A stretch of 64,000 nt of DNA from positions 124,001-188,000 of the IMG/VR virus record IMGVR_UViG_3300033182_000980. One strand, 5' to 3'. Below the pieces are notes generated by a model. That model did not search any database. It worked only from the letters and a program-made list of their open reading frames with translations, and had not been told where the DNA came from. Below, in pieces: positions 5,638 through 51,659 of this stretch. The stretch's first letter is position 1. Every line of letters starts with the position of its first letter. The position numbers and the translations under genes are program-made.

Positions 5638-6912
5638 ATGATAGCTCGATATGCTTGTCCCCAGATTGAAAGTATCTTCAGCCCGATCCATCGTTTGAGG
5701 ATCTTTGTCGAAATCGAGAGACTTTTTTGTTCGAGTCAAGGATGTCCAGATTCAATCCTTGAGGATTTCTCGAAGGTAGACCTTGAACTGCTCCTTAAAG
5801 ATTTGGCTGTTAAGGAAAAAGAAACCCGACATGAGACGGTCGCTTTCATACAGGCTCTAGGGCTTCAGATGAGTAAGGAGTCCTTGCCTTATCTTCATAA
5901 GGGGGCAACCTCGTCTGACATCCTTGACACTTGTCTTGCAACACAGATGATGAACGCTTCTGATGTTGTCATTCAAAAGATTGAGTATCTTCTTGAAACG
6001 CTCAAGAAGAAGGCGATTGAATATAAAGACACTCCCATCTTAGGACGCTCTCATGGGATGTCGGGTGAGATCACGAGCTTTGGGGTTATCTTGCTTGGGT
6101 TTTATTCAGAGTGGACTCGAAACTTAGAACGCATGAAGAGAGCACAAGAAGAAATCTCTGTCGGGAAAGTATCTGGTGCTATGGGGAACTATGTTCATAT
6201 AGACCCTCAAATCGAGAAAACAATATGCAAGGCTCTAGGGCTTGATTTTGAGCCTGTTTCGACTCAAGTAATACCAAGAGATAGACACGCATACTTTATG
6301 AGCGTATTGGGCATTTTAGGGGCATCTATGGAACGCTTATCCATAGAGGTGAGAAACTTATCACAGTCTCTCATACAAGAAGTGGCAGAAGGGTTCGGTA
6401 AAGATCAAACAGGATCATCAGCTATGCCCCATAAAAGAAATCCAATCCTGTCCGAGAACCTAACTGGACTAGCTCGTATGATCCGATCTTATGTTCAGCC
6501 TAGCCTTGAGAATGTATCTCTTTGGTATGAACGAGATATGAGTCATTCATCTGTAGAGCGTATTGCCATAGAGGACTCCCTACATCTCGTTTGCTTTGGT
6601 CTAAGCAGACTTAATGGGGTTATCAAGAACCTTTATGTAGACGCAGACAGGATGGCTCATAATATAGACCAAGTTAAAGGGTCTTATTTGAGTCAGACTT
6701 GTCTCTTGTTCCTCATGGACAAGGGGTACGCTAGAGATGATGCGTATAAGGTAGTCCAAGAGATGACCCTTTATGGTCAGAAAGATCTCCTTGATGTTTT
6801 ACAAGGGGTCAAAGAGGCGGGTCATTTGACGCAAGAGGAGTTAGATCAGATCACTTCGAGAGATCGCTTTTTAGCTCGGACGAGCTTGATCTTCTCTAGG
6901 TTCGGTCTTTGA
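5638..6912 (+). CDS. purB: Adenylosuccinate lyase
   Basis: Fumarase-superfamily signature GSSAMPHKRNP, plus H.GATSSDI.DT, GRSHG and ERDMSHSSVER; full length at 424 aa. Confidence 0.95.
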   Translation: MIARYACPQIESIFSPIHRLRIFVEIERLFCSSQGCPDSILEDFSKVDLELLLKDLAVKEKETRHETVAFIQALGLQMSKESLPYLHKGATSSDILDTCLATQMMNASDVVIQKIEYLLETLKKKAIEYKDTPILGRSHGMSGEITSFGVILLGFYSEWTRNLERMKRAQEEISVGKVSGAMGNYVHIDPQIEKTICKALGLDFEPVSTQVIPRDRHAYFMSVLGILGASMERLSIEVRNLSQSLIQEVAEGFGKDQTGSSAMPHKRNPILSENLTGLARMIRSYVQPSLENVSLWYERDMSHSSVERIAIEDSLHLVCFGLSRLNGVIKNLYVDADRMAHNIDQVKGSYLSQTCLLFLMDKGYARDDAYKVVQEMTLYGQKDLLDVLQGVKEAGHLTQEELDQITSRDRFLARTSLIFSRFGL

Positions 6913-14601: not shown

Positions 14602-15987
14602 ATGAAAATACTTGTAGGTGGAGATGTCAGCTTTGGAAGAATCTATGAAGATGAGAGGATTTCTTATTCAGCACCTTTGTGTTTAGCTTCCATAGGCGAG
14701 TTGGAGCGAGATTATTGTATCTTTAATCTTGAGAGCCTTTTTTGCGATGACTGGAAGGCAAATAAAAGAGATGTAGATGAGAAGTGGGGTACGAGCTACA
14801 CCCATGCTAATCCAGAAGATGTGAAGCATCTCATTGAGTGTGATGTAGATCATGTTTCCTTAGCTAACAACCATACACTTGATTGGGGTGAGGCAGGGGT
14901 CGAACAGACCTGTAAAGTCCTCAACAAGTTTGGCATCTCACATTCTGGATGTGGTTCTAATGATAGGACTCACATAGATAAAGAGAAGAAAATAATAGTG
15001 TTCTCGATAGATACGGTTGAGTGCCACTACAAAAAAGAAGATCCTTTAAACTGCAAAGAGGACATCAAAGACTTCTTTAAAGAGGTTAAAGAGCTTAGAG
15101 CAAAGCACGAGGATTACCTTCTGATTTGTTGTGTTCATTGGGGTCGGTTTAGGGTGAGTCCGAACAAGGGTCAGAAATCTATGGGTCGGAAGCTCATCGA
15201 CTGTGGCATTGATGTTGTTTTAGGTAATCATTCACATAAGGTGCAATACTTCGAGATGTACAAGGGTAAGCCTCTGTTTTACTCATTAGGGAACTTGTAC
15301 TTCACTCATAGAAATCCAGAATACAATAAGCCACCAAATGTTCATTACGCTTACCTCTCAACTCTTAACTTTGAGGGGCGAGATTTTAAAGGTGTAGACC
15401 ACCATCAAACTTGGTGTGACGATAAGAAGGTGGTTCTTAAAGAGGAGAAGCCCTCTAATCTTGGATTAGAAGCGTTGAGGTTTGCTCGGAGCTATATTGG
15501 CTTTGGGGAGTCCGAGCATACGACTAATGTTGGTTGGTTTATGAAGCACATAGACGCACCCAATAAGGAGACAGCGGCGTGGTGTGCGAGGTTTGTATTT
15601 TACTGTATTAAGAAAGCCTGTGAAGAGAATGGTATTGATCCAGTCCTAGAGAAGAATGACAAGACTGGATATGCTAAAGAGCTTTATAAGCAGATTGCAG
15701 AGATCGGGTATGTCTCATTAAATCCTATGCCTGGAGACATTATCGTTTGGGACAGGAAAGAGGAAGGAAACAAGAACGGACATATCGGGATAATAGAGTA
15801 TGTAGAGGGAGATAAGATCACAGCCATTGAAGGAAACAGAGCACCAAATCCTGGTTCAAAGGTTGATCGTTTTACTTACTCTTTGAACGAGCTTTTAAAC
15901 TACAAAGAGTGGGATGACGAAGATAAGCATTTCCATCTTTTTGAAGGGTTTGCTCGCCTACCTCATCTTAAAAAGTTGGACAAGTAA
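14602..15987 (+). CDS. CapA-family metallophosphoesterase fused to a CHAP amidase/peptidase
   Basis: CapA motifs GD, NLES, LANNHTLDWG, HWG, GNHSH, YSLGN. CHAP motifs AWCARFV, PGDIIVW, GHIGIIE, IEGN. Confidence 0.85.
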   Translation: MKILVGGDVSFGRIYEDERISYSAPLCLASIGELERDYCIFNLESLFCDDWKANKRDVDEKWGTSYTHANPEDVKHLIECDVDHVSLANNHTLDWGEAGVEQTCKVLNKFGISHSGCGSNDRTHIDKEKKIIVFSIDTVECHYKKEDPLNCKEDIKDFFKEVKELRAKHEDYLLICCVHWGRFRVSPNKGQKSMGRKLIDCGIDVVLGNHSHKVQYFEMYKGKPLFYSLGNLYFTHRNPEYNKPPNVHYAYLSTLNFEGRDFKGVDHHQTWCDDKKVVLKEEKPSNLGLEALRFARSYIGFGESEHTTNVGWFMKHIDAPNKETAAWCARFVFYCIKKACEENGIDPVLEKNDKTGYAKELYKQIAEIGYVSLNPMPGDIIVWDRKEEGNKNGHIGIIEYVEGDKITAIEGNRAPNPGSKVDRFTYSLNELLNYKEWDDEDKHFHLFEGFARLPHLKKLDK

Positions 15988-25976: not shown

Positions 25977-27158
25977 ATGTTTTTTAAAAACTTAAAGTCA
26001 TTAGCTAGGTCAAAGAAATCTAGCCTCTGTGTTGGTCTTGACGATCCGAATGAAAGCCAAAGGGTAGAGAGAGTCTGCTCAATCATAGATCAGACTGAAC
26101 CTTATGTGGTCTGCTACAAGTTAAACCCAGCTTTCTATCATGGTAATGCAGAGCATATAAAAGCTATTACAGATTACATGAATGAGAGAGGTCTACTCTG
26201 GATCTACGATGGGAAGCTCGGAGATGTGCCTCATACAAACACCGAGTATGCCAAGTATGTTTATGATGTCTTAGGGGCGAGTGCCATGACAGCCCACCCT
26301 TATTGTGGATATGACTCCCTCACTCACCTCATTCGTAAAGATAAAGGTCTATTCGTCTTAGCGAGGACTACAAACCCTTATGCGTATAAGATACAGAGTC
26401 GGGTTCAAGATCACCTCTATGAGTGGTGTAGTCGTTCTAAAGAGATGGGTCTTGTTGTAGCTGGTAATAAAGAGGCTTTCCTACATGAGATTAGAAAGAA
26501 CCTTCCGAACACTTGGTTCTTATCACCAGGCATCGGGGCACAAGGTGGGGGGATCAGATATGCTGTTCCAAACACTCTGTATTCAATGAGTCGGACGATC
26601 CTAAACGCATCCAATCCTGCTGAAGTGGCGAAGGAATATGGTAGGCAGTCTTACTTTGATTTAGAGATTGAGCTTGAACACCACGAACTCATCAAGAGGG
26701 GAGAGTTCACATTAGCGAGTGGTCAGAAATCTAACCTGTATATTGACCTCAAGGGAGTGAGTGGAGTACCCGAACTATTTGATCGCATCGTTCACGAGCT
26801 GATTGAACTTCTCCCCACATCACATCAGATTGTGGGGATGGCAACTGCGGGTATCTCTTTCGCTTCTGTAATGGGTTCTTACCTCAATCGACCTTTTGGG
26901 TATGCGAGATCAGAGATCAAGTCGCATGGTACAGGGAAGATCATTGAGGGTAATGTTCAAAAGGGAGTGCCGATTGTCCTCATTGAAGATGTGGTATCGA
27001 CAGGGGGTTCATTGATTAAGGCTATCCTTGCCCTTAGAGAGCAAGGATATGAGGTTAATCAAGCGATTTCTGTAGTGGACAGGGGTATGGGTGGGTCAGA
27101 GGCATTAAAGGCAATAGGGGTTGATTTAAAGAGCCTTCTTAGTATGCACGATGTTTAA
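25977..27158 (+). CDS. pyrFE: Bifunctional OMP decarboxylase / orotate phosphoribosyltransferase (PyrF-PyrE fusion)
   Basis: N-terminal half: LCVGLD, YKLNPAFY, DGKLGDV, SPGIGAQGG. C-terminal half: FTLASGQKSNLYID, VLIEDVVSTGGS. Confidence 0.93.
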   Translation: MFFKNLKSLARSKKSSLCVGLDDPNESQRVERVCSIIDQTEPYVVCYKLNPAFYHGNAEHIKAITDYMNERGLLWIYDGKLGDVPHTNTEYAKYVYDVLGASAMTAHPYCGYDSLTHLIRKDKGLFVLARTTNPYAYKIQSRVQDHLYEWCSRSKEMGLVVAGNKEAFLHEIRKNLPNTWFLSPGIGAQGGGIRYAVPNTLYSMSRTILNASNPAEVAKEYGRQSYFDLEIELEHHELIKRGEFTLASGQKSNLYIDLKGVSGVPELFDRIVHELIELLPTSHQIVGMATAGISFASVMGSYLNRPFGYARSEIKSHGTGKIIEGNVQKGVPIVLIEDVVSTGGSLIKAILALREQGYEVNQAISVVDRGMGGSEALKAIGVDLKSLLSMHDV

Positions 27159-41390: not shown

Positions 41391-44300
41391 ATGGCTATTG
41401 AAGGCGGCTACGCACCACCTGGTGTTTACACCCGAACAATTTTTGAAGATACCAATACTAATCTCGCTCAGCTACAAGGGAAAGTACCTACCCTCATTGG
41501 TGTAGGTAAACAAACCTTTTCTGTGACTGGTAGTGAGTTAGTGAGGGGGTCTTCTGCAACCATAGATCAAAGGATTGTAGAAGAAGATCCTACAGGTCGA
41601 ATGATTGCTGACACAAACCCCGATGGTTCTTTTGTCCTCTCTGACTTTGATGGTGTCTTGACAGAAGTATATGTGAGACACTTCCCAATCGTAACTGGAG
41701 ACGGATCGGGAACTACCTCAAATACCCCTAGCTCTGTATCAGCGACTATCAATGGCAACGCTACTGTTATCCTTGAGGTTGATGGTGCGAATGGGAAAAT
41801 TCGTCTCGCAGAAGCACCGAGTCAAGGTGATGATGTTAGGATTTCTTACTTCTTCAATCGTACAGATACTTTTGTTGAAGATGAGGTTTTAACCTCACAG
41901 GTTTCTGATTTCCAAACAGAGATCAGAGGTTCTGCTTCTACTTTTGTGATCACTGCCGAGACTAATACTCTTATCCTCACTTGTGACGGTGAGACTCAAG
42001 TCCTCACACTTGGTGTTGAAGCAAATAGAGCCGACTCTCTCGATAAGGTTCAGAACATCATTAATGGTGCGAGTATTGGATCACTTGAGGCAAGCACCTA
42101 TGTAGACCAAGACGGCTCGGAGAACCTTCTTCTTTCTGCTGATGGCGAAATCATCGTAGGTGCAGGTTCTGCTAACCTCGCTCTTGGTATTTACACCAAT
42201 CAGAGAGGCACAGCTAGAAATCGTACCTTCTTCACCACGAACGGACCGATTGTTGACGGAACAAACGCTGGTGTCATCACTACTGATGTTAGCCTCATCA
42301 CAGTTAAAGTAAATAACGCTGTCGTTCAAGCCGAGTCTGTTGACGGTGCAAATGGGTCGTTTACTCTTGCGAGTCCTCCATCGGTTGGCTCGACAGTAAG
42401 TGTTTCTTACTACCACAACACATTCCGAGATCAGTTCGATTACATCCCTGGTCGTGATGTTAAATCACTTGATCGTGTTTCACTTGTTGCGAGTGGTGGA
42501 GGAGCGGCAGCTCAGTTCATTCAAGATGTAGATTTCGTACTACATGACGATAAGATCGTTTGGGGTACTGCTTCAATCGTATCTCAAGGTGATATCCAGA
42601 CTGGTAATACTGCATTCGGCACTACTCAAGTTTCAGCCCTTCTTCGTGATGAGCGTGGGTATCTCTTAGAGTGTTCTCCTGTTGTTAACACTAGCGTGAT
42701 CCCACCAAGAGTCCTAGCAAATACCTTTAAACTCCCTTATCAGCCTGTGGACGGTACAGGGTCGGGTATTCCTAGCTCTAATCCAGCTCTTATCCAAGTA
42801 CGCACAGGCGTTTCATTTGCTGACGCACTAGAAAACCCTGTAGCGACTGTGACTAGAGTTGATCCAGCTACTTCACAGATTACTCTTGCGACAGCACCAC
42901 CTACAAACCACAAGGTGTTCGCTACATTCTTCTATAGCATCCTCCAAGATCGCTTTGATCTTAATGCTTATAATGTGGCAGTTGAAACCGTTGGTGCAAG
43001 TGGTATTGGTACATACACCCTTACTTCTGGTACGACATCATTCTTCGGAGCAGAGCTTACAGCTAAGGGGGCTGATCTCTCCGAGGTTGTGGTCGAGTTC
43101 CCAAGTGGTTCAGAAGCTCTTATCGGCACTCGTTTCTCTGGTGGTGTTCCTGTAGAGGAGACTATCACACTTGAGTTTGGTGATTTTGAGGCTACTCCAG
43201 CAGTCTTCTTTGCCGAGGGGTCAGCTTCTTATTACCTTGTTCAAGGTCAGAGCGACACTCTTAATATCACAGTAGATGCACAGCCTGTGGTTGTTGAGTT
43301 CGATCAGCCTACCGAGGGTGGTCGTACAGGACACATCACACACCAAGTTGGTGAGGTTCTTCCTTACACAGCAGAGTCAAACAACGCTGATCTTGGTACA
43401 GGGATTTCTACTTCGGTTGATCTCGTTGTTGATGGTAAGGCACTTGCTTCGGCTACTGTTGCTGGTGATGACAAGACTGTCGATCACCTTATCACAGAAA
43501 TCAACACACAGGCAGAGGCTGTTCCAGCTTCTTACACTGCCATGTCCCCATTCGGATCATGGGAGGCTAAGAACAACACCTTTAAGTCGTTCGAGTTTAG
43601 GTATGTAGGTTCTACGAGTGGGCCTTCTGCAACTTTGACAGCTACCATTGCCGAAGCAGTTTATGGTAATGCGTCTGCTCTTGCAGGTGACTCTGACCTA
43701 GCTGATGTAAATAACTCGACAGGTGTCAATAAAGCGATTCAGACAGCGATTGAGACTTATGTTGCAGGTGCAGGAGCCGCTGTCTTTGATGGTCTTGAGA
43801 TCACAGTAAGTGCTGATACAAGCAACCGTCTTGTTTTCTCACTTGTTGGCGTTCCTAATGTTGCAGATGGTGCAGGTGGGGATGACGATTTCGGATATGT
43901 GGAGTTCATTGGTGCTGATGATGATACCTTCCTATCAGTAGCTGGTATCGACTATGATGTTGCAGGTGGTACTCAGTCTAAGTGGGGTCAGCTACCTGTA
44001 GCTTCTAAGGTTTCCACAGCTCTTGGTGGTGGTGCTCTTAGAGATCGTTTGATTCTCAAGAACCGAACCTTTGTAGGTAATAACTACTACCCACCTGTTG
44101 ATCTTGGCTTGAGCGTCACCACTGGTACTAACCTTGATCTTATGGGTATTTCACCTACCCTTAATGTTGTAGGCACTCGTACCTCAATCCTCGATAAACC
44201 TTCTATCCGACTTACAGTTGGATGGGACGAGGTTGACGCTAACGGTATTCCAGCTAAGATTCTTTACAATGGTGATACAGAGGATGCTAATAACATCCTT

Positions 44301-46250
44301 TCATTGACCATTGATGGCACACCGATTTCTGTGAACTTGCTTCACACTCAACTTAACGCTTATGTAGATGGTGACACTCTTGATGTGGCTGACATTGTAG
44401 ATCAGTTAAACGATGGAGTGGAAGGTCTTATCCATGCGACAGCGTATGTTGAGGGTCAGTACATTCGTATCGTGAGCAACAAAAACACCACTACCTCTTA
44501 CATTAAGGTTGGTTCAGGTTCAGCTAACACAGCCTTTGGGTTGACCGAGAATACTGTTGTAGCGACTAAGGGTCTTTCAGCTCAGTCGCTATCAGATGCT
44601 CTTATGAGTAGTCTTGAGGCTAATGCTGATATTAAGGACGCTCTATTCTCCACAGATCAGACTGGTGGTGCGGCTGATAAGTTTGGTACTAACGCTGTAG
44701 CTCTTATCCACACAGATGCTGTTGGGAAACAGTATCTTGGATTCGAGTCTCTTTCAGTAGGTGTGGCGAGTATTCTTGATGTGACTGGTGGTAATGTTGC
44801 CACCACTAAGGGTACAGGTCTAAAGATCACCGCCGATTCGGGTGCTGTTGGGGAAGCCTCTTATCAAGGCTATAACCTCTCATCAAACAATCCTAATGGT
44901 ACAGGTTCAGCAGGCACTTCTACCCTCAAGGATGGTGTAGGTGCAGACGGTCGTATCAGTCAGACTTATGTTGACTCTGTGACAGGGTTCTCAATCACTA
45001 TCCTCCCTAGAGAGGGTGGTATAGAGTACCCGACAGGTGCAGATGCGACTATGACCTTTAATGTAAGCTCTAGCCTTAAGACTAATGCGAACATTCCACA
45101 GTACGCTATTCCAGGTGTCTCATTGGTTGTTTCTAACACCCTTGATACAGCGATTGGTGATAACGCACTTGTAGAGACTTTCTACAAGGGTGGTAAAGAG
45201 CCTACTATCGGTCAGACTTATTACATCGACTTCACTAGAGATCGCTCGAACTTCAACACTCGTACCTTCTCTAACCTTGCCGATGTGGTTCGCACTTATG
45301 GTGAGATTTCTCTTGAGAACACCTTATCAATGGGTGCATTCCTTGCGTTCTCGAATGGGGCGACAGCACTTGCTTGTAAGCAGATCCAACTTGATGTTAA
45401 TCAGACTGCCCCTACCGAAGATCAGATGGTGACAGCACTTCAAGAGATTGAGGGTGAGATTGTGCCAGGTCTTTCACCAAGTGTGGTCGTACCTCTCATG
45501 CCTGCTTCGACAGCCCTTCTCTCAGCGATTTCTAATCACTGTGATGTTCAGTCCTCGCTTCGTTATCGTTCAGAGCGTAGAGCTGTTCTCGGTTGTGCAG
45601 TTGGTACTCAACCTCGTGATGCTCAAGCTCTCGCTCAAGCGACAGGGAACTCTCGTGTATGTTTGATTTATCCAGACATTGCAAACATTCGTTTCACCGA
45701 CTCTCAAGGTGTGTCTCAGAGCTACTTCGTAGGTGGTGAGATGATCGCAGTTGCAGTTGCGATGGCTACTTCTAATCCAGCACTAGACTCGGCTACTCCT
45801 TGGACTAACCGATCTGTTAATGGGTTCACTGATCTTGGTCGTATCCTTGATGATGTTGATGCGAATACCACAGCGAATGCAGGTATTACTGTCCTCAAGC
45901 AGACTCCACAAGGCATCCAGGTTCGTCATGGTCTAACCACCAATATGACTTCTGTGTTGACCAAGACCCCGACAGTCGTTCAGATCGCTGACGATGTTCA
46001 CTTGCGAGTACGCAATCTCTGTAATCGTTATATCGGTCAAAAGTTTGTTCCGAATACGATTTCTCAGATTGAGGGTCGTGTGAATGGACTCTTTAAGCAG
46101 TTGGTTCGAGATCAGATCATCTCGACTTACACAGGTCTTACTGTAGCGACTGACCCGAATGACCCAACAGGTCTTTTGGTTGATGTGTTCTACAAGCCTG
46201 TATATCCTCTCCTTTACATTCAGTTTACCTTTACTGTTCAAGGTAGCTGA
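41391..46250 (+). CDS. Contractile tail sheath protein (1619 aa, with inserted domains)
   Basis: N-terminal YAPPGVYTRT; sheath C-terminal domain (R.CLIYP, G.TVL, VRHGL.T, YIGQKF, V.Y.PVYPL.YI.F.F). Confidence 0.85.
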   Translation: MAIEGGYAPPGVYTRTIFEDTNTNLAQLQGKVPTLIGVGKQTFSVTGSELVRGSSATIDQRIVEEDPTGRMIADTNPDGSFVLSDFDGVLTEVYVRHFPIVTGDGSGTTSNTPSSVSATINGNATVILEVDGANGKIRLAEAPSQGDDVRISYFFNRTDTFVEDEVLTSQVSDFQTEIRGSASTFVITAETNTLILTCDGETQVLTLGVEANRADSLDKVQNIINGASIGSLEASTYVDQDGSENLLLSADGEIIVGAGSANLALGIYTNQRGTARNRTFFTTNGPIVDGTNAGVITTDVSLITVKVNNAVVQAESVDGANGSFTLASPPSVGSTVSVSYYHNTFRDQFDYIPGRDVKSLDRVSLVASGGGAAAQFIQDVDFVLHDDKIVWGTASIVSQGDIQTGNTAFGTTQVSALLRDERGYLLECSPVVNTSVIPPRVLANTFKLPYQPVDGTGSGIPSSNPALIQVRTGVSFADALENPVATVTRVDPATSQITLATAPPTNHKVFATFFYSILQDRFDLNAYNVAVETVGASGIGTYTLTSGTTSFFGAELTAKGADLSEVVVEFPSGSEALIGTRFSGGVPVEETITLEFGDFEATPAVFFAEGSASYYLVQGQSDTLNITVDAQPVVVEFDQPTEGGRTGHITHQVGEVLPYTAESNNADLGTGISTSVDLVVDGKALASATVAGDDKTVDHLITEINTQAEAVPASYTAMSPFGSWEAKNNTFKSFEFRYVGSTSGPSATLTATIAEAVYGNASALAGDSDLADVNNSTGVNKAIQTAIETYVAGAGAAVFDGLEITVSADTSNRLVFSLVGVPNVADGAGGDDDFGYVEFIGADDDTFLSVAGIDYDVAGGTQSKWGQLPVASKVSTALGGGALRDRLILKNRTFVGNNYYPPVDLGLSVTTGTNLDLMGISPTLNVVGTRTSILDKPSIRLTVGWDEVDANGIPAKILYNGDTEDANNILSLTIDGTPISVNLLHTQLNAYVDGDTLDVADIVDQLNDGVEGLIHATAYVEGQYIRIVSNKNTTTSYIKVGSGSANTAFGLTENTVVATKGLSAQSLSDALMSSLEANADIKDALFSTDQTGGAADKFGTNAVALIHTDAVGKQYLGFESLSVGVASILDVTGGNVATTKGTGLKITADSGAVGEASYQGYNLSSNNPNGTGSAGTSTLKDGVGADGRISQTYVDSVTGFSITILPREGGIEYPTGADATMTFNVSSSLKTNANIPQYAIPGVSLVVSNTLDTAIGDNALVETFYKGGKEPTIGQTYYIDFTRDRSNFNTRTFSNLADVVRTYGEISLENTLSMGAFLAFSNGATALACKQIQLDVNQTAPTEDQMVTALQEIEGEIVPGLSPSVVVPLMPASTALLSAISNHCDVQSSLRYRSERRAVLGCAVGTQPRDAQALAQATGNSRVCLIYPDIANIRFTDSQGVSQSYFVGGEMIAVAVAMATSNPALDSATPWTNRSVNGFTDLGRILDDVDANTTANAGITVLKQTPQGIQVRHGLTTNMTSVLTKTPTVVQIADDVHLRVRNLCNRYIGQKFVPNTISQIEGRVNGLFKQLVRDQIISTYTGLTVATDPNDPTGLLVDVFYKPVYPLLYIQFTFTVQGS

Positions 46251-49141: not shown

Positions 49142-49238
49142 TTTTTTGTTCCTTTCGAGTGTGCTTTTGTATAATACCCATGTGAGCGTCAATGGACGCT
49201 TGACATTCATCTTTGAAAACTCGTGTGATCTTAACTTG

Positions 49239-49302
49239 AGTCAAGTCGTTTAACGGCAAGACACCATTTGGTGATGTGAGGTTCGAGTCCTCGCCTTGGC
49301 TT
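49239..49302 (+). ncRNA. tRNA-like RNA with truncated anticodon arm
   Basis: Acceptor AGTCAAG/CTTGGCT, D-stem GTTT/AGAC, T-arm TGAGG-TTCGAGT-CCTCG; anticodon arm only CCATTTGG. Confidence 0.6.
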
Positions 49303-49449: not shown

Positions 49450-49692
49450 CTAGGTTCTCCCACCATTCCTTTATTTTAACTAGGGGAAATTAGGCTTACA
49501 ATGGTGGGAGGGTCTTATCCTAGACAATAACCTTAGAAAATAAAGAACTGCTTACAAGTCTAGGAGTAAGCCTGTAATCCCTCAAAATCTACCATGTGGG
49601 GGGTCGCCGTGAGATAATGTGGTGGGGTGATTCTCTCTGACCTAGTTAGTCCAAACTTGAGAGATTTCTATTGATAATCATGGAGTATAGTC

Positions 49693-49770
49693 ATGGGAAA
49701 CCCTAACTATCCATCCAAGTCCGGAAACCCAAGTGGTGGTGGACGCGGAAATACCCCGAAGTCTAAATGA
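49693..49770 (+). CDS. 25-aa G/P/N-rich peptide
   Basis: MGNPNYPSKSGNPSGGGRGNTPKSK with a GGAG RBS 7 nt upstream. Confidence 0.45.
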   Translation: MGNPNYPSKSGNPSGGGRGNTPKSK

Positions 49771-50097
49771 GACTTGACAAGATCAACCTTGACCTCTTAA
49801 ATGAGGTCGTGTTGAACAATGCCTTGTGTCTTACCCAGACATTCCTTACCCTTTGATCTGTGGGGTAGGCAAATCAGATCAGCTCTTTCTTCTTTGGAAG
49901 ATACTCCCCCTAGTTGTTCCGTAGGGTAGAGCGAAAACGGAACGCTTAATATGTCTGACTCCTCTTGGTGGAGCTTGTCGGGTTCGACTCCCACAGATGT
50001 ACTAGACCCTCATATCTTTTTCATTCTACATATTAACTTAGCTTTTATGTTGAATGGTGTATTGGGATAAAGTATGAGTTTTTGAGGGTCTAACTTT

Positions 50098-50171
50098 GCA
50101 CCAGTAGCTCAGTTGGATAGAGCAGTGGCCTTCTAAGCCATTGGTCGTAGGTTCGAGTCCTACCTGGTGCG
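50098..50171 (+). tRNA. tRNA-Arg(TCT)
   Basis: Cloverleaf; GTGGC-CTTCTAA-GCCAT. Confidence 0.95.
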
Positions 50172-50173
50172 TT

Positions 50174-50275
50174 TGCTTGATTGGTATTCAACCTCTTATT
50201 GGAGAGTCATCTCTAATAGGGTTGGTGCTTCTTTAAGAGGTTCAAACTCTGGTTCGATTCCAGATCAAGCAACCA
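50174..50275 (+). ncRNA. tRNA-like RNA with encoded CCA and non-canonical core
   Basis: Acceptor TGCTTGA/TCAAGCA plus ACCA; T-arm TCTGG-TTCGATT-CCAGA; 67-nt interior with a long hairpin. Confidence 0.6.
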
Positions 50276-50599
50276 CTCCCTGTTCCTAATAGGAACTCTT
50301 CAAACGGACGCATAGAGGGAATGGGGAAACAGACAAGCGTTTGCCGAAAGGGTCTTGTCTGGGGGATGCTTACGCTTCTGATTGCCACCGTAGATGAAGA
50401 TGTAGCTCTTGGGGAACTATGGTTTCGCAACATAACCTAACCAAGAGGGGAGTATTCCAAAAATGTTTAAAGGTGAAGCGAGGGCATTACACCAATGCGA
50501 ATACGGTATCGGGGAAGTCTGCTCATTCCTCTCGTTCACATCTCATCTATCTTTGGTAGAAGGGGTGTGAGCCAATCTTATGTCAAAAAGGAATGTGTC

Positions 50600-50872
50600 A
50601 TGTCTAAGAGAGTAGAAGATCTAAGAATTCTTGTGAACAAGAAAATGAAGCTCGATAAATACTTGAGTATCTGTGAGGGGCTTCATTATGTTTGTTTTTT
50701 CATGCTCATCTTCTATGTAGTCACATTCAAGAATGGAGACACACCTTATTTGATTTCTTGGGCGTTTCTTGCACTTATTGGTTGGGTAGCTACAACGATA
50801 CTTGAGAAGAAGATAGTCCAAGTGAAACTAGAAATGACATCAGAGTTGTTTGAAAGTAAATCGCAAGAGTAG
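50600..50872 (+). CDS. Small two-TM membrane protein
   Basis: Two hydrophobic segments; start reassigned to 50600. Confidence 0.55.
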   Translation: MSKRVEDLRILVNKKMKLDKYLSICEGLHYVCFFMLIFYVVTFKNGDTPYLISWAFLALIGWVATTILEKKIVQVKLEMTSELFESKSQE

Positions 50873-51187: not shown

Positions 51188-51259
51188 GTACCTGTAGCTC
51201 AACGAACAGAGCCTCATCGTTGTAGATGAGAGGTCTAGGTGTAAGTCCTAGTGGGTACA
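51188..51259 (+). pseudogene. Degenerate tRNA-Thr-like element
   Basis: All stems pair, but the anticodon loop is 8 nt (CGTTGTAG), the T-loop is TGTAAGT and the D-loop lacks GG. Confidence 0.6.
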
Positions 51260-51659
51260 AGTTGGAGTTAAGTAAGTGTCTGCTGTCGGGGGTTCGTTAA
51301 CATTTCCCTTCCGACAGAAGTCTCCCCATTACTAAGCTAGTCGAAACCCACCACATGGGGTGGCGTAAATGACATATTACTTAACTTGAGTAGTGATACT
51401 CTACATATACCAGCAAATGGTATATGTAGAATCCTACCCTTACAGGAGAAATCCTGTAAGCAGTTATACTAATGAAAATGTTAGCATTGGGCTTTACGCT
51501 GATGGTGGTATGCACTTGGAGGGTCTAAGCCTACCCTACCCTGAGACTCATTCAACCCTTATTCGTTTAAGGGGAGTGTACTCATAGTAGAAATGACTAG
51601 AACTGGTCTAGGATTTCCCTAGACCTTACTACTATGGGTAGATTAGGTCTACCCGCTTT

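What the first reader, a model, noticed from the sequence alone, without database searches (positions are those of the whole stretch)
50174..50275. tRNA mimic: perfect acceptor stem, T-arm and encoded CCA, but no anticodon arm
Seen: a 7-bp acceptor stem, canonical T-arm and ACCA end. The interior is a mini hairpin, a long hairpin (CCTCTTATTGGAGA-GTCA-TCTCTAATAGGG) and a short stem. It begins 3 nt after tRNA-Arg(TCT). It is the only tRNA-like element here that encodes CCA; none of the nine canonical tRNAs does. Inference: a functional tRNA-like RNA, e.g. a decoy for anticodon nucleases or uncharged-tRNA sensors, an aminoacyl donor, or a primer.
Basis: partly seen in the sequence, partly recalled or inferred. 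Interest (0 to 1): 0.6.

Follow-up and report, generated by a model that had tools for sequence, protein, structure and literature searches.

The report
tRNA-like head of a phage RNA
The tRNA look-alike is real and kept by selection, but its "CCA end" is base-paired to sequence downstream, so it is most likely the tRNA-shaped front domain of a roughly 400-base unknown RNA in a giant marine phage's tRNA cluster, not a free tRNA decoy.

Summary
Window 50174-50275 has a perfect 7-bp acceptor stem, a canonical T-arm (TCTGG-TTCGATT-CCAGA) and ACCA. It has no anticodon arm and starts 2 nt after the discriminator of tRNA-Arg(TCT). Such a minihelix arises 0.007 times per shuffled window, and never with CCA.

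ARAGORN and Rfam do not call it a tRNA. None of the nine true tRNAs encodes CCA.

Eight distinct variants from related uncultivated jumbo phages keep the acceptor and T stems through compensatory changes. The interior hairpins change in length and shape.

Two new points change the reading:
- The CCA plus the next 6 nt (50273-50281) pairs with 50316-50324 in a 9-bp helix. It has three compensatory pairs, as well supported as the acceptor stem. One lineage has UCA, which keeps this helix but not a CCA end.
- The following ~300 nt (to ~50575) are as conserved as tRNA-Arg and fold into a covarying multi-stem RNA with no Rfam match.

Best reading: a tRNA-like 5' domain of a ~400-nt phage RNA, co-transcribed with tRNA-Arg. 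It probably serves as an RNase P handle that also frees the tRNA-Arg 3' end.

Closest precedents are T4 rnaD/rnaC, which also follow tRNA-Arg, and GOLLD RNAs with linked tRNAs. Function is untested.

The parts
49170..49175 (+). Conserved TATAAT box, candidate promoter of the rightward tRNA array
   Evidence: Conserved in all five aligned relatives. The simple promoter scan did not list it. This is inference only.
50098..50171 (+). tRNA-Arg(TCT), no encoded CCA. It is the upstream partner in the conserved block.
   Evidence: ARAGORN; Rfam 73.4 bits. Present directly upstream of the element in every relative.
50172..50173 (+). 2-nt spacer. The base before the element (-1) is U in every variant.
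   Evidence: Alignment. U at -1 is the preferred bacterial RNase P context (established knowledge).
50174..50180 (+). Acceptor stem, 5' strand
   Evidence: Pairs with 50265-50271. Pair 1 is UA or CG; pair 6 is GC, AU or GU. All cells are paired.
50181..50187 (+). Conserved TTGGYAT after the acceptor. Possible D-loop analogue (GG), and possible partner of 50491-50495.
   Evidence: G10 and G11 are invariant. Long-range pairing is kept in 8 of 8 sequences and at no other site. Evidence is suggestive only.
50195..50220 (+). Central 11-bp hairpin with GTCA loop, in place of an anticodon arm. Not conserved.
   Evidence: Fold. The loop is GTCA, GCCA or ATTT in other long forms. The 5' strand is deleted in the short forms, and L053 has two mismatches.
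50228..50241 (+). Short second hairpin (variable-arm position)
   Evidence: A 4-6 bp hairpin can be drawn in every variant, but in shifted register. Weak evidence.
50248..50264 (+). T-arm: 5-bp stem and TTCGATT loop
   Evidence: Loop invariant. One stem pair is CG or UA.
50265..50272 (+). Acceptor stem 3' strand plus discriminator A
   Evidence: The discriminator is G in RNA-library contigs of a relative.
50273..50281 (+). Helix Px, 5' strand: the encoded CCA plus CTCCCT
   Evidence: Pairs with 50316-50324 over 9 pairs, 3 of them with compensatory changes; 98% of cells paired. Also predicted by RNAalifold.
50282..50308 (+). Two small hairpins enclosed by Px (GTTCC-TAAT-AGGAAC, and TCT..GGA)
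   Evidence: Nearly invariant and always pairable.
50316..50324 (+). Helix Px, 3' strand (AGGGAATGG); its TGG pairs with the CCA
50325..50533 (+). Conserved multi-stem RNA body
   Evidence: 70-100% identity to distant clade members while the flanks are unalignable. RNAalifold gives 106 pairs, 14 with compensatory changes. A 4-nt indel rules out a conserved reading frame. No Rfam match.
50491..50499 (+). ACCAATGCG, candidate long-range partner of the element's 5' end (YGC, AUUGGY)
   Evidence: Paired in 8 of 8 sequences, against 22-44% when slid. It partly conflicts with the acceptor stem. Unproven.
50534..50572 (+). Terminal hairpin at the 3' edge of the conserved block
   Evidence: Six pairs with compensatory changes. 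Conservation ends at about 50575. No U-tract follows.

Best explanation
The element is the tRNA-shaped 5' domain of a conserved RNA of about 400 nt (window 50174 to ~50575). This RNA is transcribed with tRNA-Arg(TCT) in the tRNA array of an uncultivated 376-kb jumbo phage.

Shown:
- An acceptor/T-arm minihelix with an intact T-loop is kept by compensatory change.
- Its CCA is held in a covarying 9-bp helix (Px) with downstream sequence.
- The next ~300 nt form a conserved, covarying, non-coding fold.
- tRNA-Arg, the element and this RNA are conserved as one block.

Inferred mechanism:
- Host RNase P recognises the minihelix and cuts at 50173/50174.
- That cut gives the long RNA its mature 5' end and leaves tRNA-Arg with a 2-nt trailer.
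- The trailer is trimmed and CCA is added by the phage's own tandem CCA-adding-type enzyme or the host's.
- Px keeps the tRNA-like domain covalently attached. It shields the CCA from 3' processing and charging.
- The exposed tRNA elbow may also dock the RNA to tRNA-binding machinery.

The function of the whole RNA is unknown.
For: - Not chance.
- Covariation in acceptor, T-stem and Px: 99.5% of cells paired, and 0 of 500 shuffles reach the observed paired fraction or covariation score.
- The UCA variant occurs in two independent contigs. It preserves Px as U.G but destroys a CCA end.
- One continuous conserved block runs 50100-50575 with unconserved flanks.
- The downstream fold has 14 compensatory pairs.
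- A second contact between the element's 5' region and 50491-50499 is kept in 8 of 8 sequences.
- U at -1 and a fixed 2-nt spacer occur in all variants.
- The phage's nine tRNA genes lack CCA. It encodes a 948-aa protein with two PolyA_pol head plus RNA-binding modules.
- Contigs from three RNA libraries run across the CCA junction, 50127/50188 to 50578.
- Precedents: T4 has tRNA-Arg, then rnaD 1 nt later, then rnaC, which carries a T-arm; their roles are unknown (PMC3014915). GOLLD and ROOL lie near phage tRNA islands, and tRNAs are sometimes linked inside GOLLD (bioRxiv 10.1101/2024.12.08.627333). RNase P processes tRNA-like non-tRNA substrates (PMC11143913).
Against: - No RNA ends were mapped. 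The RNA-library data are assembled contigs that also bridge the tRNA-Arg/element junction, and they could be precursor or contaminating DNA.
- Only 8 variants in about 4 lineages of one narrow clade, so covariation counts are small.
- CCA is kept in 7 of 8 DNA variants, so a role as a true 3' end after cleavage is not excluded.
- A paired CCA cannot make the usual contact with RNase P RNA.
- The long-range pairing partly conflicts with the acceptor stem.
- No function for the 300-nt part can be named.
Confidence: 0.45

Rival explanations
1. Free-standing tRNA mimic. The ~100-nt element is cut out at both ends, carries a free CCA, and acts in trans as a decoy for tRNA-end-targeting enzymes, a substrate for a synthetase or aminoacyl transferase, or a primer. 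Px would be only a precursor structure that guides 3' cleavage.
For: - Intact 12-bp acceptor/T stack, canonical T-loop and CCA in 7 of 8 DNA variants.
- It is the only CCA-encoding element in the array.
- T4 rnaC and rnaD are discrete stable RNAs made from the same kind of position (PMC9697503).
Against: - The CCA strand covaries as a helix.
- The UCA lineage.
- No anticodon loop, so it cannot decoy anticodon nucleases.
- The interior is not conserved.
- The D-region appears to pair with the downstream RNA.
- RNA-library contigs cross the CCA junction.
- No alanine-type G3.U70 pair; position 3:70 is C-G.
Confidence: 0.2
2. Decaying tRNA gene, for example a former long-variable-arm tRNA. The anticodon arm has been destroyed, and the element is kept only because it still supplies a processing site for tRNA-Arg.
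For: - Interior indels and a changing fold.
- Other degenerate tRNA-like sequences lie in the same array, at 49240-49300 and 51188-51272.
- More distant relatives have ordinary tRNAs right after tRNA-Arg(TCT).
Against: - Compensatory changes and an invariant T-loop show ongoing selection on the minihelix.
- The conserved Px link and the 300-nt partner are not explained by this view.
- No donor tRNA was recognisable among phage tRNAs or in 185,579 species genomes.
Confidence: 0.12
3. Unusual suppressor or long-arm tRNA that still decodes. ARAGORN labels the L004 and L053 copies tRNA-Pyl(CTA).
For: ARAGORN calls in two relatives.
Against: - The drawn D and anticodon stems contain mismatches. They use one strand of the 11-bp hairpin as the loop.
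- There is no call in the window or in the short forms.
- The supposed anticodon region is not conserved.
- Open reading frames in the window are dense under the standard code.
Confidence: 0.03
4. tmRNA-like rescue RNA, or an integration site that copies the 3' half of a host tRNA.
For: - Like the tmRNA tRNA-like domain, it has an acceptor, T-arm, ACCA, a reduced D region with GG, and no anticodon.
- Phage attachment sites often carry a tRNA 3' half with CCA.
Against: - ARAGORN finds no tmRNA.
- No Rfam tmRNA hit.
- No SmpB gene.
- No G3.U70.
- The large RNA lies after the CCA, not inside the tRNA-like domain.
- Both acceptor strands covary within the phage.
- The 3' half occurs in no tRNA gene of 185,579 species' genomes: none with CCA, and one chance coding-region match without it.
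Confidence: 0.03

Closest known systems
Phage T4 small stable RNAs rnaD (species 2) and rnaC (species 1)
   Same: - They sit in the phage tRNA cluster directly after tRNA-Arg(TCT), with 1 nt of spacing in T4 and 2 nt here.
- rnaC has a canonical T-arm closed by an end-to-end stem, with a long hairpin and a second hairpin inside.
- Their roles are still unknown (PMC3014915, PMC9697503).
- My model of the element scores the rnaC 3' part second in the T4 region (19.6 bits, E 0.0085).
   Different: - No demonstrable sequence homology.
- The rnaC closing stem has two U.U mismatches and no CCA.
- No equivalent of Px or of a conserved 300-nt partner is known in T4.
- The phages are unrelated; the one structural protein tested has no match in isolate phages.
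GOLLD and ROOL large ornate phage RNAs
   Same: - Large structured non-coding RNAs of phages and prophages, often next to tRNA islands.
- GOLLD env-38 lies downstream of a tRNA-Met in a marine sample, and tRNAs are sometimes covalently linked within GOLLD (bioRxiv 10.1101/2024.12.08.627333; PMC5737381).
- Function is unknown in both.
   Different: - No Rfam match to either family.
- Much smaller (about 400 nt against 580-800 nt and more).
- Here the linked module is a tRNA mimic without an anticodon, and its CCA is paired.
- Multimer or cage formation was not tested.
tRNA-like domain of tmRNA
   Same: Acceptor stem, T-arm, ACCA, a reduced D region with GG, and a helix in place of the anticodon arm.
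   Different: - No G3.U70.
- No tag reading frame.
- The large domain is appended after the CCA instead of inserted.
- No SmpB in the phage.
- Not detected by ARAGORN or Rfam.
tRNA-like processing handles (MALAT1 mascRNA; plant mitochondrial t-elements)
   Same: A tRNA-shaped module without decoding function is placed next to another RNA, so that tRNA-processing enzymes define that RNA's ends (PMC1920247 for t-elements; mascRNA from general knowledge).
   Different: - Those are eukaryotic or organellar, and the handle is cut off.
- Here the evidence points to the handle staying attached through Px.
- Cleavage is not demonstrated.
Bacterial Y RNA-like YrlA
   Same: A non-coding RNA containing a tRNA-mimicking module (PMC4201824).
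   Different: - No Rfam YrlA hit on the element. There are only sub-threshold hits elsewhere, on true tRNAs.
- In YrlA the ends form the Ro-binding stem, not an acceptor stem.
- I did not search the phage for a Ro60 (TROVE) gene.

Membership tests
Canonical tRNA (Rfam RF00005) | Cloverleaf with D-arm, a 5-bp anticodon stem and a 7-nt loop; detectable by tRNA models | tested here: not met
   No RF00005 hit even at E<=10. No ARAGORN call in the window. The apical loop is 4 nt and variable.
Canonical tRNA (Rfam RF00005) | 7-bp acceptor stem stacked on a 5-bp T-stem with a TTCRANN loop | tested here: met
tmRNA | tRNA-like domain with G3.U70; tag reading frame and pseudoknots between the two halves of the tRNA-like domain | tested here: not met
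   Position 3:70 is C-G. The interior is only about 65 nt of hairpins. ARAGORN tmRNA search is negative. No Rfam tmRNA hit. No SmpB in the phage.
T4-type tRNA-operon stable RNAs (rnaC/rnaD) | Encoded in the phage tRNA cluster directly downstream of tRNA-Arg and co-transcribed | tested here: met
   Position shown. Co-transcription is inferred from the spacing and from RNA-library contigs.
T4-type tRNA-operon stable RNAs (rnaC/rnaD) | Sequence or structure homology to T4 rnaC or rnaD | tested here: inconclusive
   R1 hits the rnaC 3' part at 19.6 bits, E 0.0085, driven largely by the T-arm. No curated family exists to test against.
T4-type tRNA-operon stable RNAs (rnaC/rnaD) | Accumulates as a discrete stable RNA | not testable with these tools
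   Only assembled contigs of RNA libraries were available.
GOLLD / ROOL | Match to the conserved GOLLD 3' domain or the ROOL consensus | tested here: not met
   No hit at the gathering threshold or at E<=10.
GOLLD / ROOL | Phage-borne, next to a tRNA island, large multi-stem fold | tested here: met
   The size (about 400 nt) is smaller.
YrlA (Rfam RF02553) | Match to the family model | tested here: not met
   Only 18-19 bit hits on true tRNAs elsewhere, against a gathering score of 69.
Plant-virus tRNA-like structures (RF00233) | Pseudoknotted acceptor arm at a genome 3' end | tested here: not met
   No hit on the element. The acceptor is a plain helix.
Phage attachment site copying a host tRNA 3' half | Identity of the T-arm/acceptor 3' strand to a cellular tRNA gene | tested here: not met
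   0 matches with CCA, and one chance match in a coding region without it, in 185,579 species genomes.

The most novel reading that the evidence does not exclude
The ~400-nt RNA is a new class of phage tRNA-island RNA. Its built-in tRNA mimic is a working interface and not just a cutting site. For example, it could dock the RNA to RNase P, the CCA-adding enzyme or the ribosome. Alternatively, it could switch between a sequestered CCA (Px, long-range pairing) and a free, chargeable CCA. That would be a smaller cousin of tmRNA or of GOLLD with linked tRNAs.
Probability: 0.25. Interest if true: 0.75.

Novelty: new variant of a known kind. Interest (0 to 1): 0.55.

Why it matters
Small and large RNAs of unknown role have been known beside phage tRNA genes for decades: T4 species 1 and 2 for fifty years, and GOLLD and ROOL since 2009 and 2017.

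This locus offers a compact, well-defined case. A tRNA mimic is visibly wired into such an RNA through a covarying helix that hides its CCA. The phage also carries CCA-less tRNAs and its own two-headed CCA-adding-type enzyme.

If the tRNA-like domain is shown to recruit RNase P or other tRNA machinery, it would give a testable rationale for why these RNAs live in tRNA islands. If it is only a processing handle, it is a tidy but modest addition to known tRNA-like punctuation.

Tried and rejected
- **Rfam:** scanned at gathering and at E<=10 over the window, the array and the 460-nt unit. Only true tRNAs and noise were found.
- **ARAGORN 'tRNA-Pyl(CTA)':** the calls in L004 and L053 use mismatched stems and one strand of the central hairpin. 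Rejected.
- **Isolate phages:** nothing beyond the tRNA-Arg part by megablast or blastn, and no match for the 407-nt unit. A neighbouring structural protein also has no match.
- **Distant relatives** (62-68% ligase identity; one genome is 95% complete): no element. Their tRNA-Arg(TCT) is followed by ordinary tRNAs.
- **Donor tRNA:** none recognisable.
- **Host tRNA or attachment-site origin:** not supported.
- **tmRNA idea:** no SmpB. No RtcB either.
- **Interior structure:** acceptor- and T-arm-constrained folds differ between variants, so I claim no conserved interior structure.
- **RNA libraries:** only assembled contigs were on hand, so no ends or strand could be read. The apparent lack of cover over the next ORF is not a valid DNA control, because relatives diverge or lack that ORF.
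- **Promoter and terminator scan:** it listed neither the conserved TATAAT nor a terminator after the unit.
- **Long-range pairing on the 415-column alignment:** I did not send this structure to the pair-counting tool. I computed it by script instead.

Full report
**Setting**

The window is bases 124001-188000 of a 375,691-bp IMG/VR virus record rated complete. It is a jumbo phage with no close relative among 50,697 deposited phage genomes.

Between about 49,200 and 56,000 lies an array of nine tRNA genes on the + strand, separated by long non-coding spacers. A DNA ligase gene lies just upstream.

**The observation**

- acceptor TGCTTGA/TCAAGCA
- T-arm TCTGG-TTCGATT-CCAGA
- ACCA
- an 11-bp hairpin with a GTCA loop where an anticodon arm would be

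ARAGORN and Rfam's tRNA model do not report it, even at E<=10. It folds far better than shuffles (z = -4.1).

A scan for a perfect 7-bp acceptor plus 5-bp T-stem plus TTCRANN loop finds only true tRNAs and this element. Shuffled windows give 0.007 such hits, and none with CCA in 300 shuffles. None of the nine true tRNAs is followed by CCA. The element starts 2 nt after the tRNA-Arg(TCT) discriminator.

**Relatives**

I found relatives in three ways:
- the neighbouring ligase
- DNA patterns in IMG/VR
- one pattern scan of JGI metagenomes

Together these gave eight distinct versions of the locus. All lie directly after tRNA-Arg(TCT). Five are 'long' forms of 99-102 nt and three are 'short' forms of 91-92 nt.

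On an alignment of the eight versions, a structure I specified was paired in 99.5% of cells. None of 500 column shuffles reached the observed paired fraction or covariation score, and slid controls fell to 33-51%.
- The acceptor stem has two pairs with changes on both sides (UA/CG; GC/AU).
- The T-stem has one (CG/UA).
- The T-loop and a TTGG after the acceptor never vary.

In contrast, the central hairpin changes its loop (GTCA, GCCA, ATTT) and acquires mismatches in L053. It loses its 5' strand in the short forms. Folds with acceptor and T-arm enforced share no common interior. So there is no anticodon, and only the acceptor/T minihelix and its elbow are under clear constraint.

The alignment of the wider region and an identity profile show one continuous conserved block from tRNA-Arg through the element to about 50575. 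The block is 70-100% identical even to the most distant clade members, while both flanks are unalignable. The least conserved part of the block is the interior of the element.

The ~300 nt after the CCA carry no conserved reading frame, because a 4-nt indel shifts the frame. RNAalifold folds them into a multi-stem structure with 14 of 106 pairs showing compensatory changes. This includes a terminal hairpin (50534-50572) with six such pairs. Rfam has nothing like it.

Most important, the CCA itself plus the next six bases (50273-50281) pairs with 50316-50324, whose TGG faces the CCA. This helix, Px, has three pairs with changes on both sides and 98% of cells paired. That is as good as the acceptor stem.

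Two independent metagenome contigs (L027, L058) read ATCA instead of ACCA. The C-to-U change keeps a U.G pair in Px but would ruin a CCA end.

A second contact is possible. The element's 5' YGC and AUUGGY can pair with ACCAATGCG at 50491-50499 in all eight sequences and nowhere else. The evidence is mostly one-sided changes, and part of this pairing competes with the acceptor stem. I treat it as a lead.

**Expression**

Four marine metatranscriptome runs hold parts of the array. Their contigs come from a relative about 92% identical to the window. They cover 50127-50578, 50188-50578 and 50186-50490 in three runs, so they run across the CCA junction.

These are assemblies, not reads. They show presence in RNA libraries but no ends or strand, and DNA carry-over cannot be excluded. 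The same contigs carry a G discriminator (GCCA).

**Context in the genome**

- The phage encodes a 948-aa protein with two PolyA_pol head domains, each with the RNA-binding domain of CCA-adding enzymes. This fits a phage whose tRNA genes lack CCA.
- It has no SmpB or RtcB.
- The unit is single-copy.
- More distant relatives (62-68% ligase identity, one 95% complete) lack the element. They have ordinary tRNAs after tRNA-Arg(TCT). The unit is therefore confined to one narrow clade.
- The element's 3' half occurs in no tRNA gene of 185,579 species genomes: none with CCA, and one chance coding-region match without it. No donor tRNA is recognisable.

**Interpretation**

The data fit best a tRNA-like 5' domain that belongs to a ~400-nt RNA.

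A 12-bp acceptor/T stack with an intact elbow is what RNase P measures (PMC4919913). RNase P is known to cut tRNA-like non-tRNA substrates, including phage RNAs (PMC11143913). The base at -1 is U and the spacer is 2 nt in every variant.

I therefore infer the following:
- RNase P cuts at 50173/50174.
- This frees tRNA-Arg with a short trailer for trimming and CCA addition, and creates the 5' end of the long RNA.
- Px keeps the mimic attached and its CCA hidden.

This mechanism is inference. What is shown is the structure, its conservation and its linkage.

The free-mimic reading remains possible if Px is only a precursor fold. A decaying tRNA, a suppressor tRNA, a tmRNA and an attachment site are each contradicted by specific tests, given above.

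**Comparison with known systems**

T4 places two small stable RNAs of unknown role, rnaD and rnaC, directly after its tRNA-Arg(TCT) (PMC3014915; PMC9697503). rnaC has a T-arm, a closing stem and two internal hairpins. My model of the element scores it just below T4 tRNA-Arg. Homology cannot be claimed.

GOLLD and ROOL are large phage RNAs near tRNA islands, and GOLLD sometimes has tRNAs linked inside it (bioRxiv 10.1101/2024.12.08.627333; PMC5737381). The present RNA matches neither model.

I file this as a new variant of a known kind: phage tRNA-island RNAs and tRNA-like handles. It has an unusual and well-supported feature, a cis-paired CCA.

Noticed in passing
window 50276-50575: About 300 nt of non-coding sequence, as conserved as the neighbouring tRNA. 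It has a covarying multi-stem fold and no Rfam match, so it is a candidate new structured phage RNA. It became part of the main finding.
   Followed up: partly
window ~51188-51272 (homologs near L004:14040-14125, L008:12620-12705, L005:7270-7355): A second non-canonical tRNA-like element that ARAGORN and Rfam miss. It has a D-arm, a 6-bp 'anticodon' stem with a 6-nt loop, and a T-arm with an odd loop (TGTAAGT). Three stem pairs covary across relatives. The two inner acceptor pairs are broken in L008.
   Followed up: partly
window 49240-49300: A 61-nt tRNA-like relic at the head of the array. It has an acceptor with 6 of 7 pairs and a T-arm TGAGG-TTCGAGT-CCTCG. It is not conserved in the L008 clade.
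   Followed up: partly
outside the window: G000:C1:257901-260747, minus strand (L066:1402-4248): A 948-aa protein with two tandem PolyA_pol head plus RNA-binding modules. This would be a two-headed CCA-adding-type nucleotidyltransferase, in a phage whose nine tRNA genes all lack CCA.
   Followed up: partly
window 49682-50002, including a 25-codon ORF at 49693-49770: The spacer between the two tRNA-Arg genes is partly conserved across clades. It is covered by contigs in all four RNA libraries. It holds a small Gly/Pro/Ser-rich ORF (read).
   Followed up: no
window 50600-50872 and 50863: The likely true start of the small ORF after the RNA is ATG 50600, with AAAGGAA upstream. Its stop codon lies inside the first bases of tRNA-Gly. 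The ORF is absent from the L008, L005 and L006 clade.
   Followed up: no
window 49170-49175: A perfect TATAAT preceded by TG, conserved in all relatives just upstream of the array. The simple promoter scan did not list it.
   Followed up: no
window 5638-6912, 25977-27158, 14602-15987, 41391-46250: Auxiliary and unusual genes: adenylosuccinate lyase; an OMP decarboxylase fused to a phosphoribosyltransferase; a PGA_cap plus CHAP protein; and a 1619-aa protein ending in a tail-sheath domain.
   Followed up: no
L004:19799-19871: ARAGORN reports a 'tRNA-???' with a two-base anticodon in a relative. This may be another aberrant tRNA-like gene in this phage clade.
   Followed up: no
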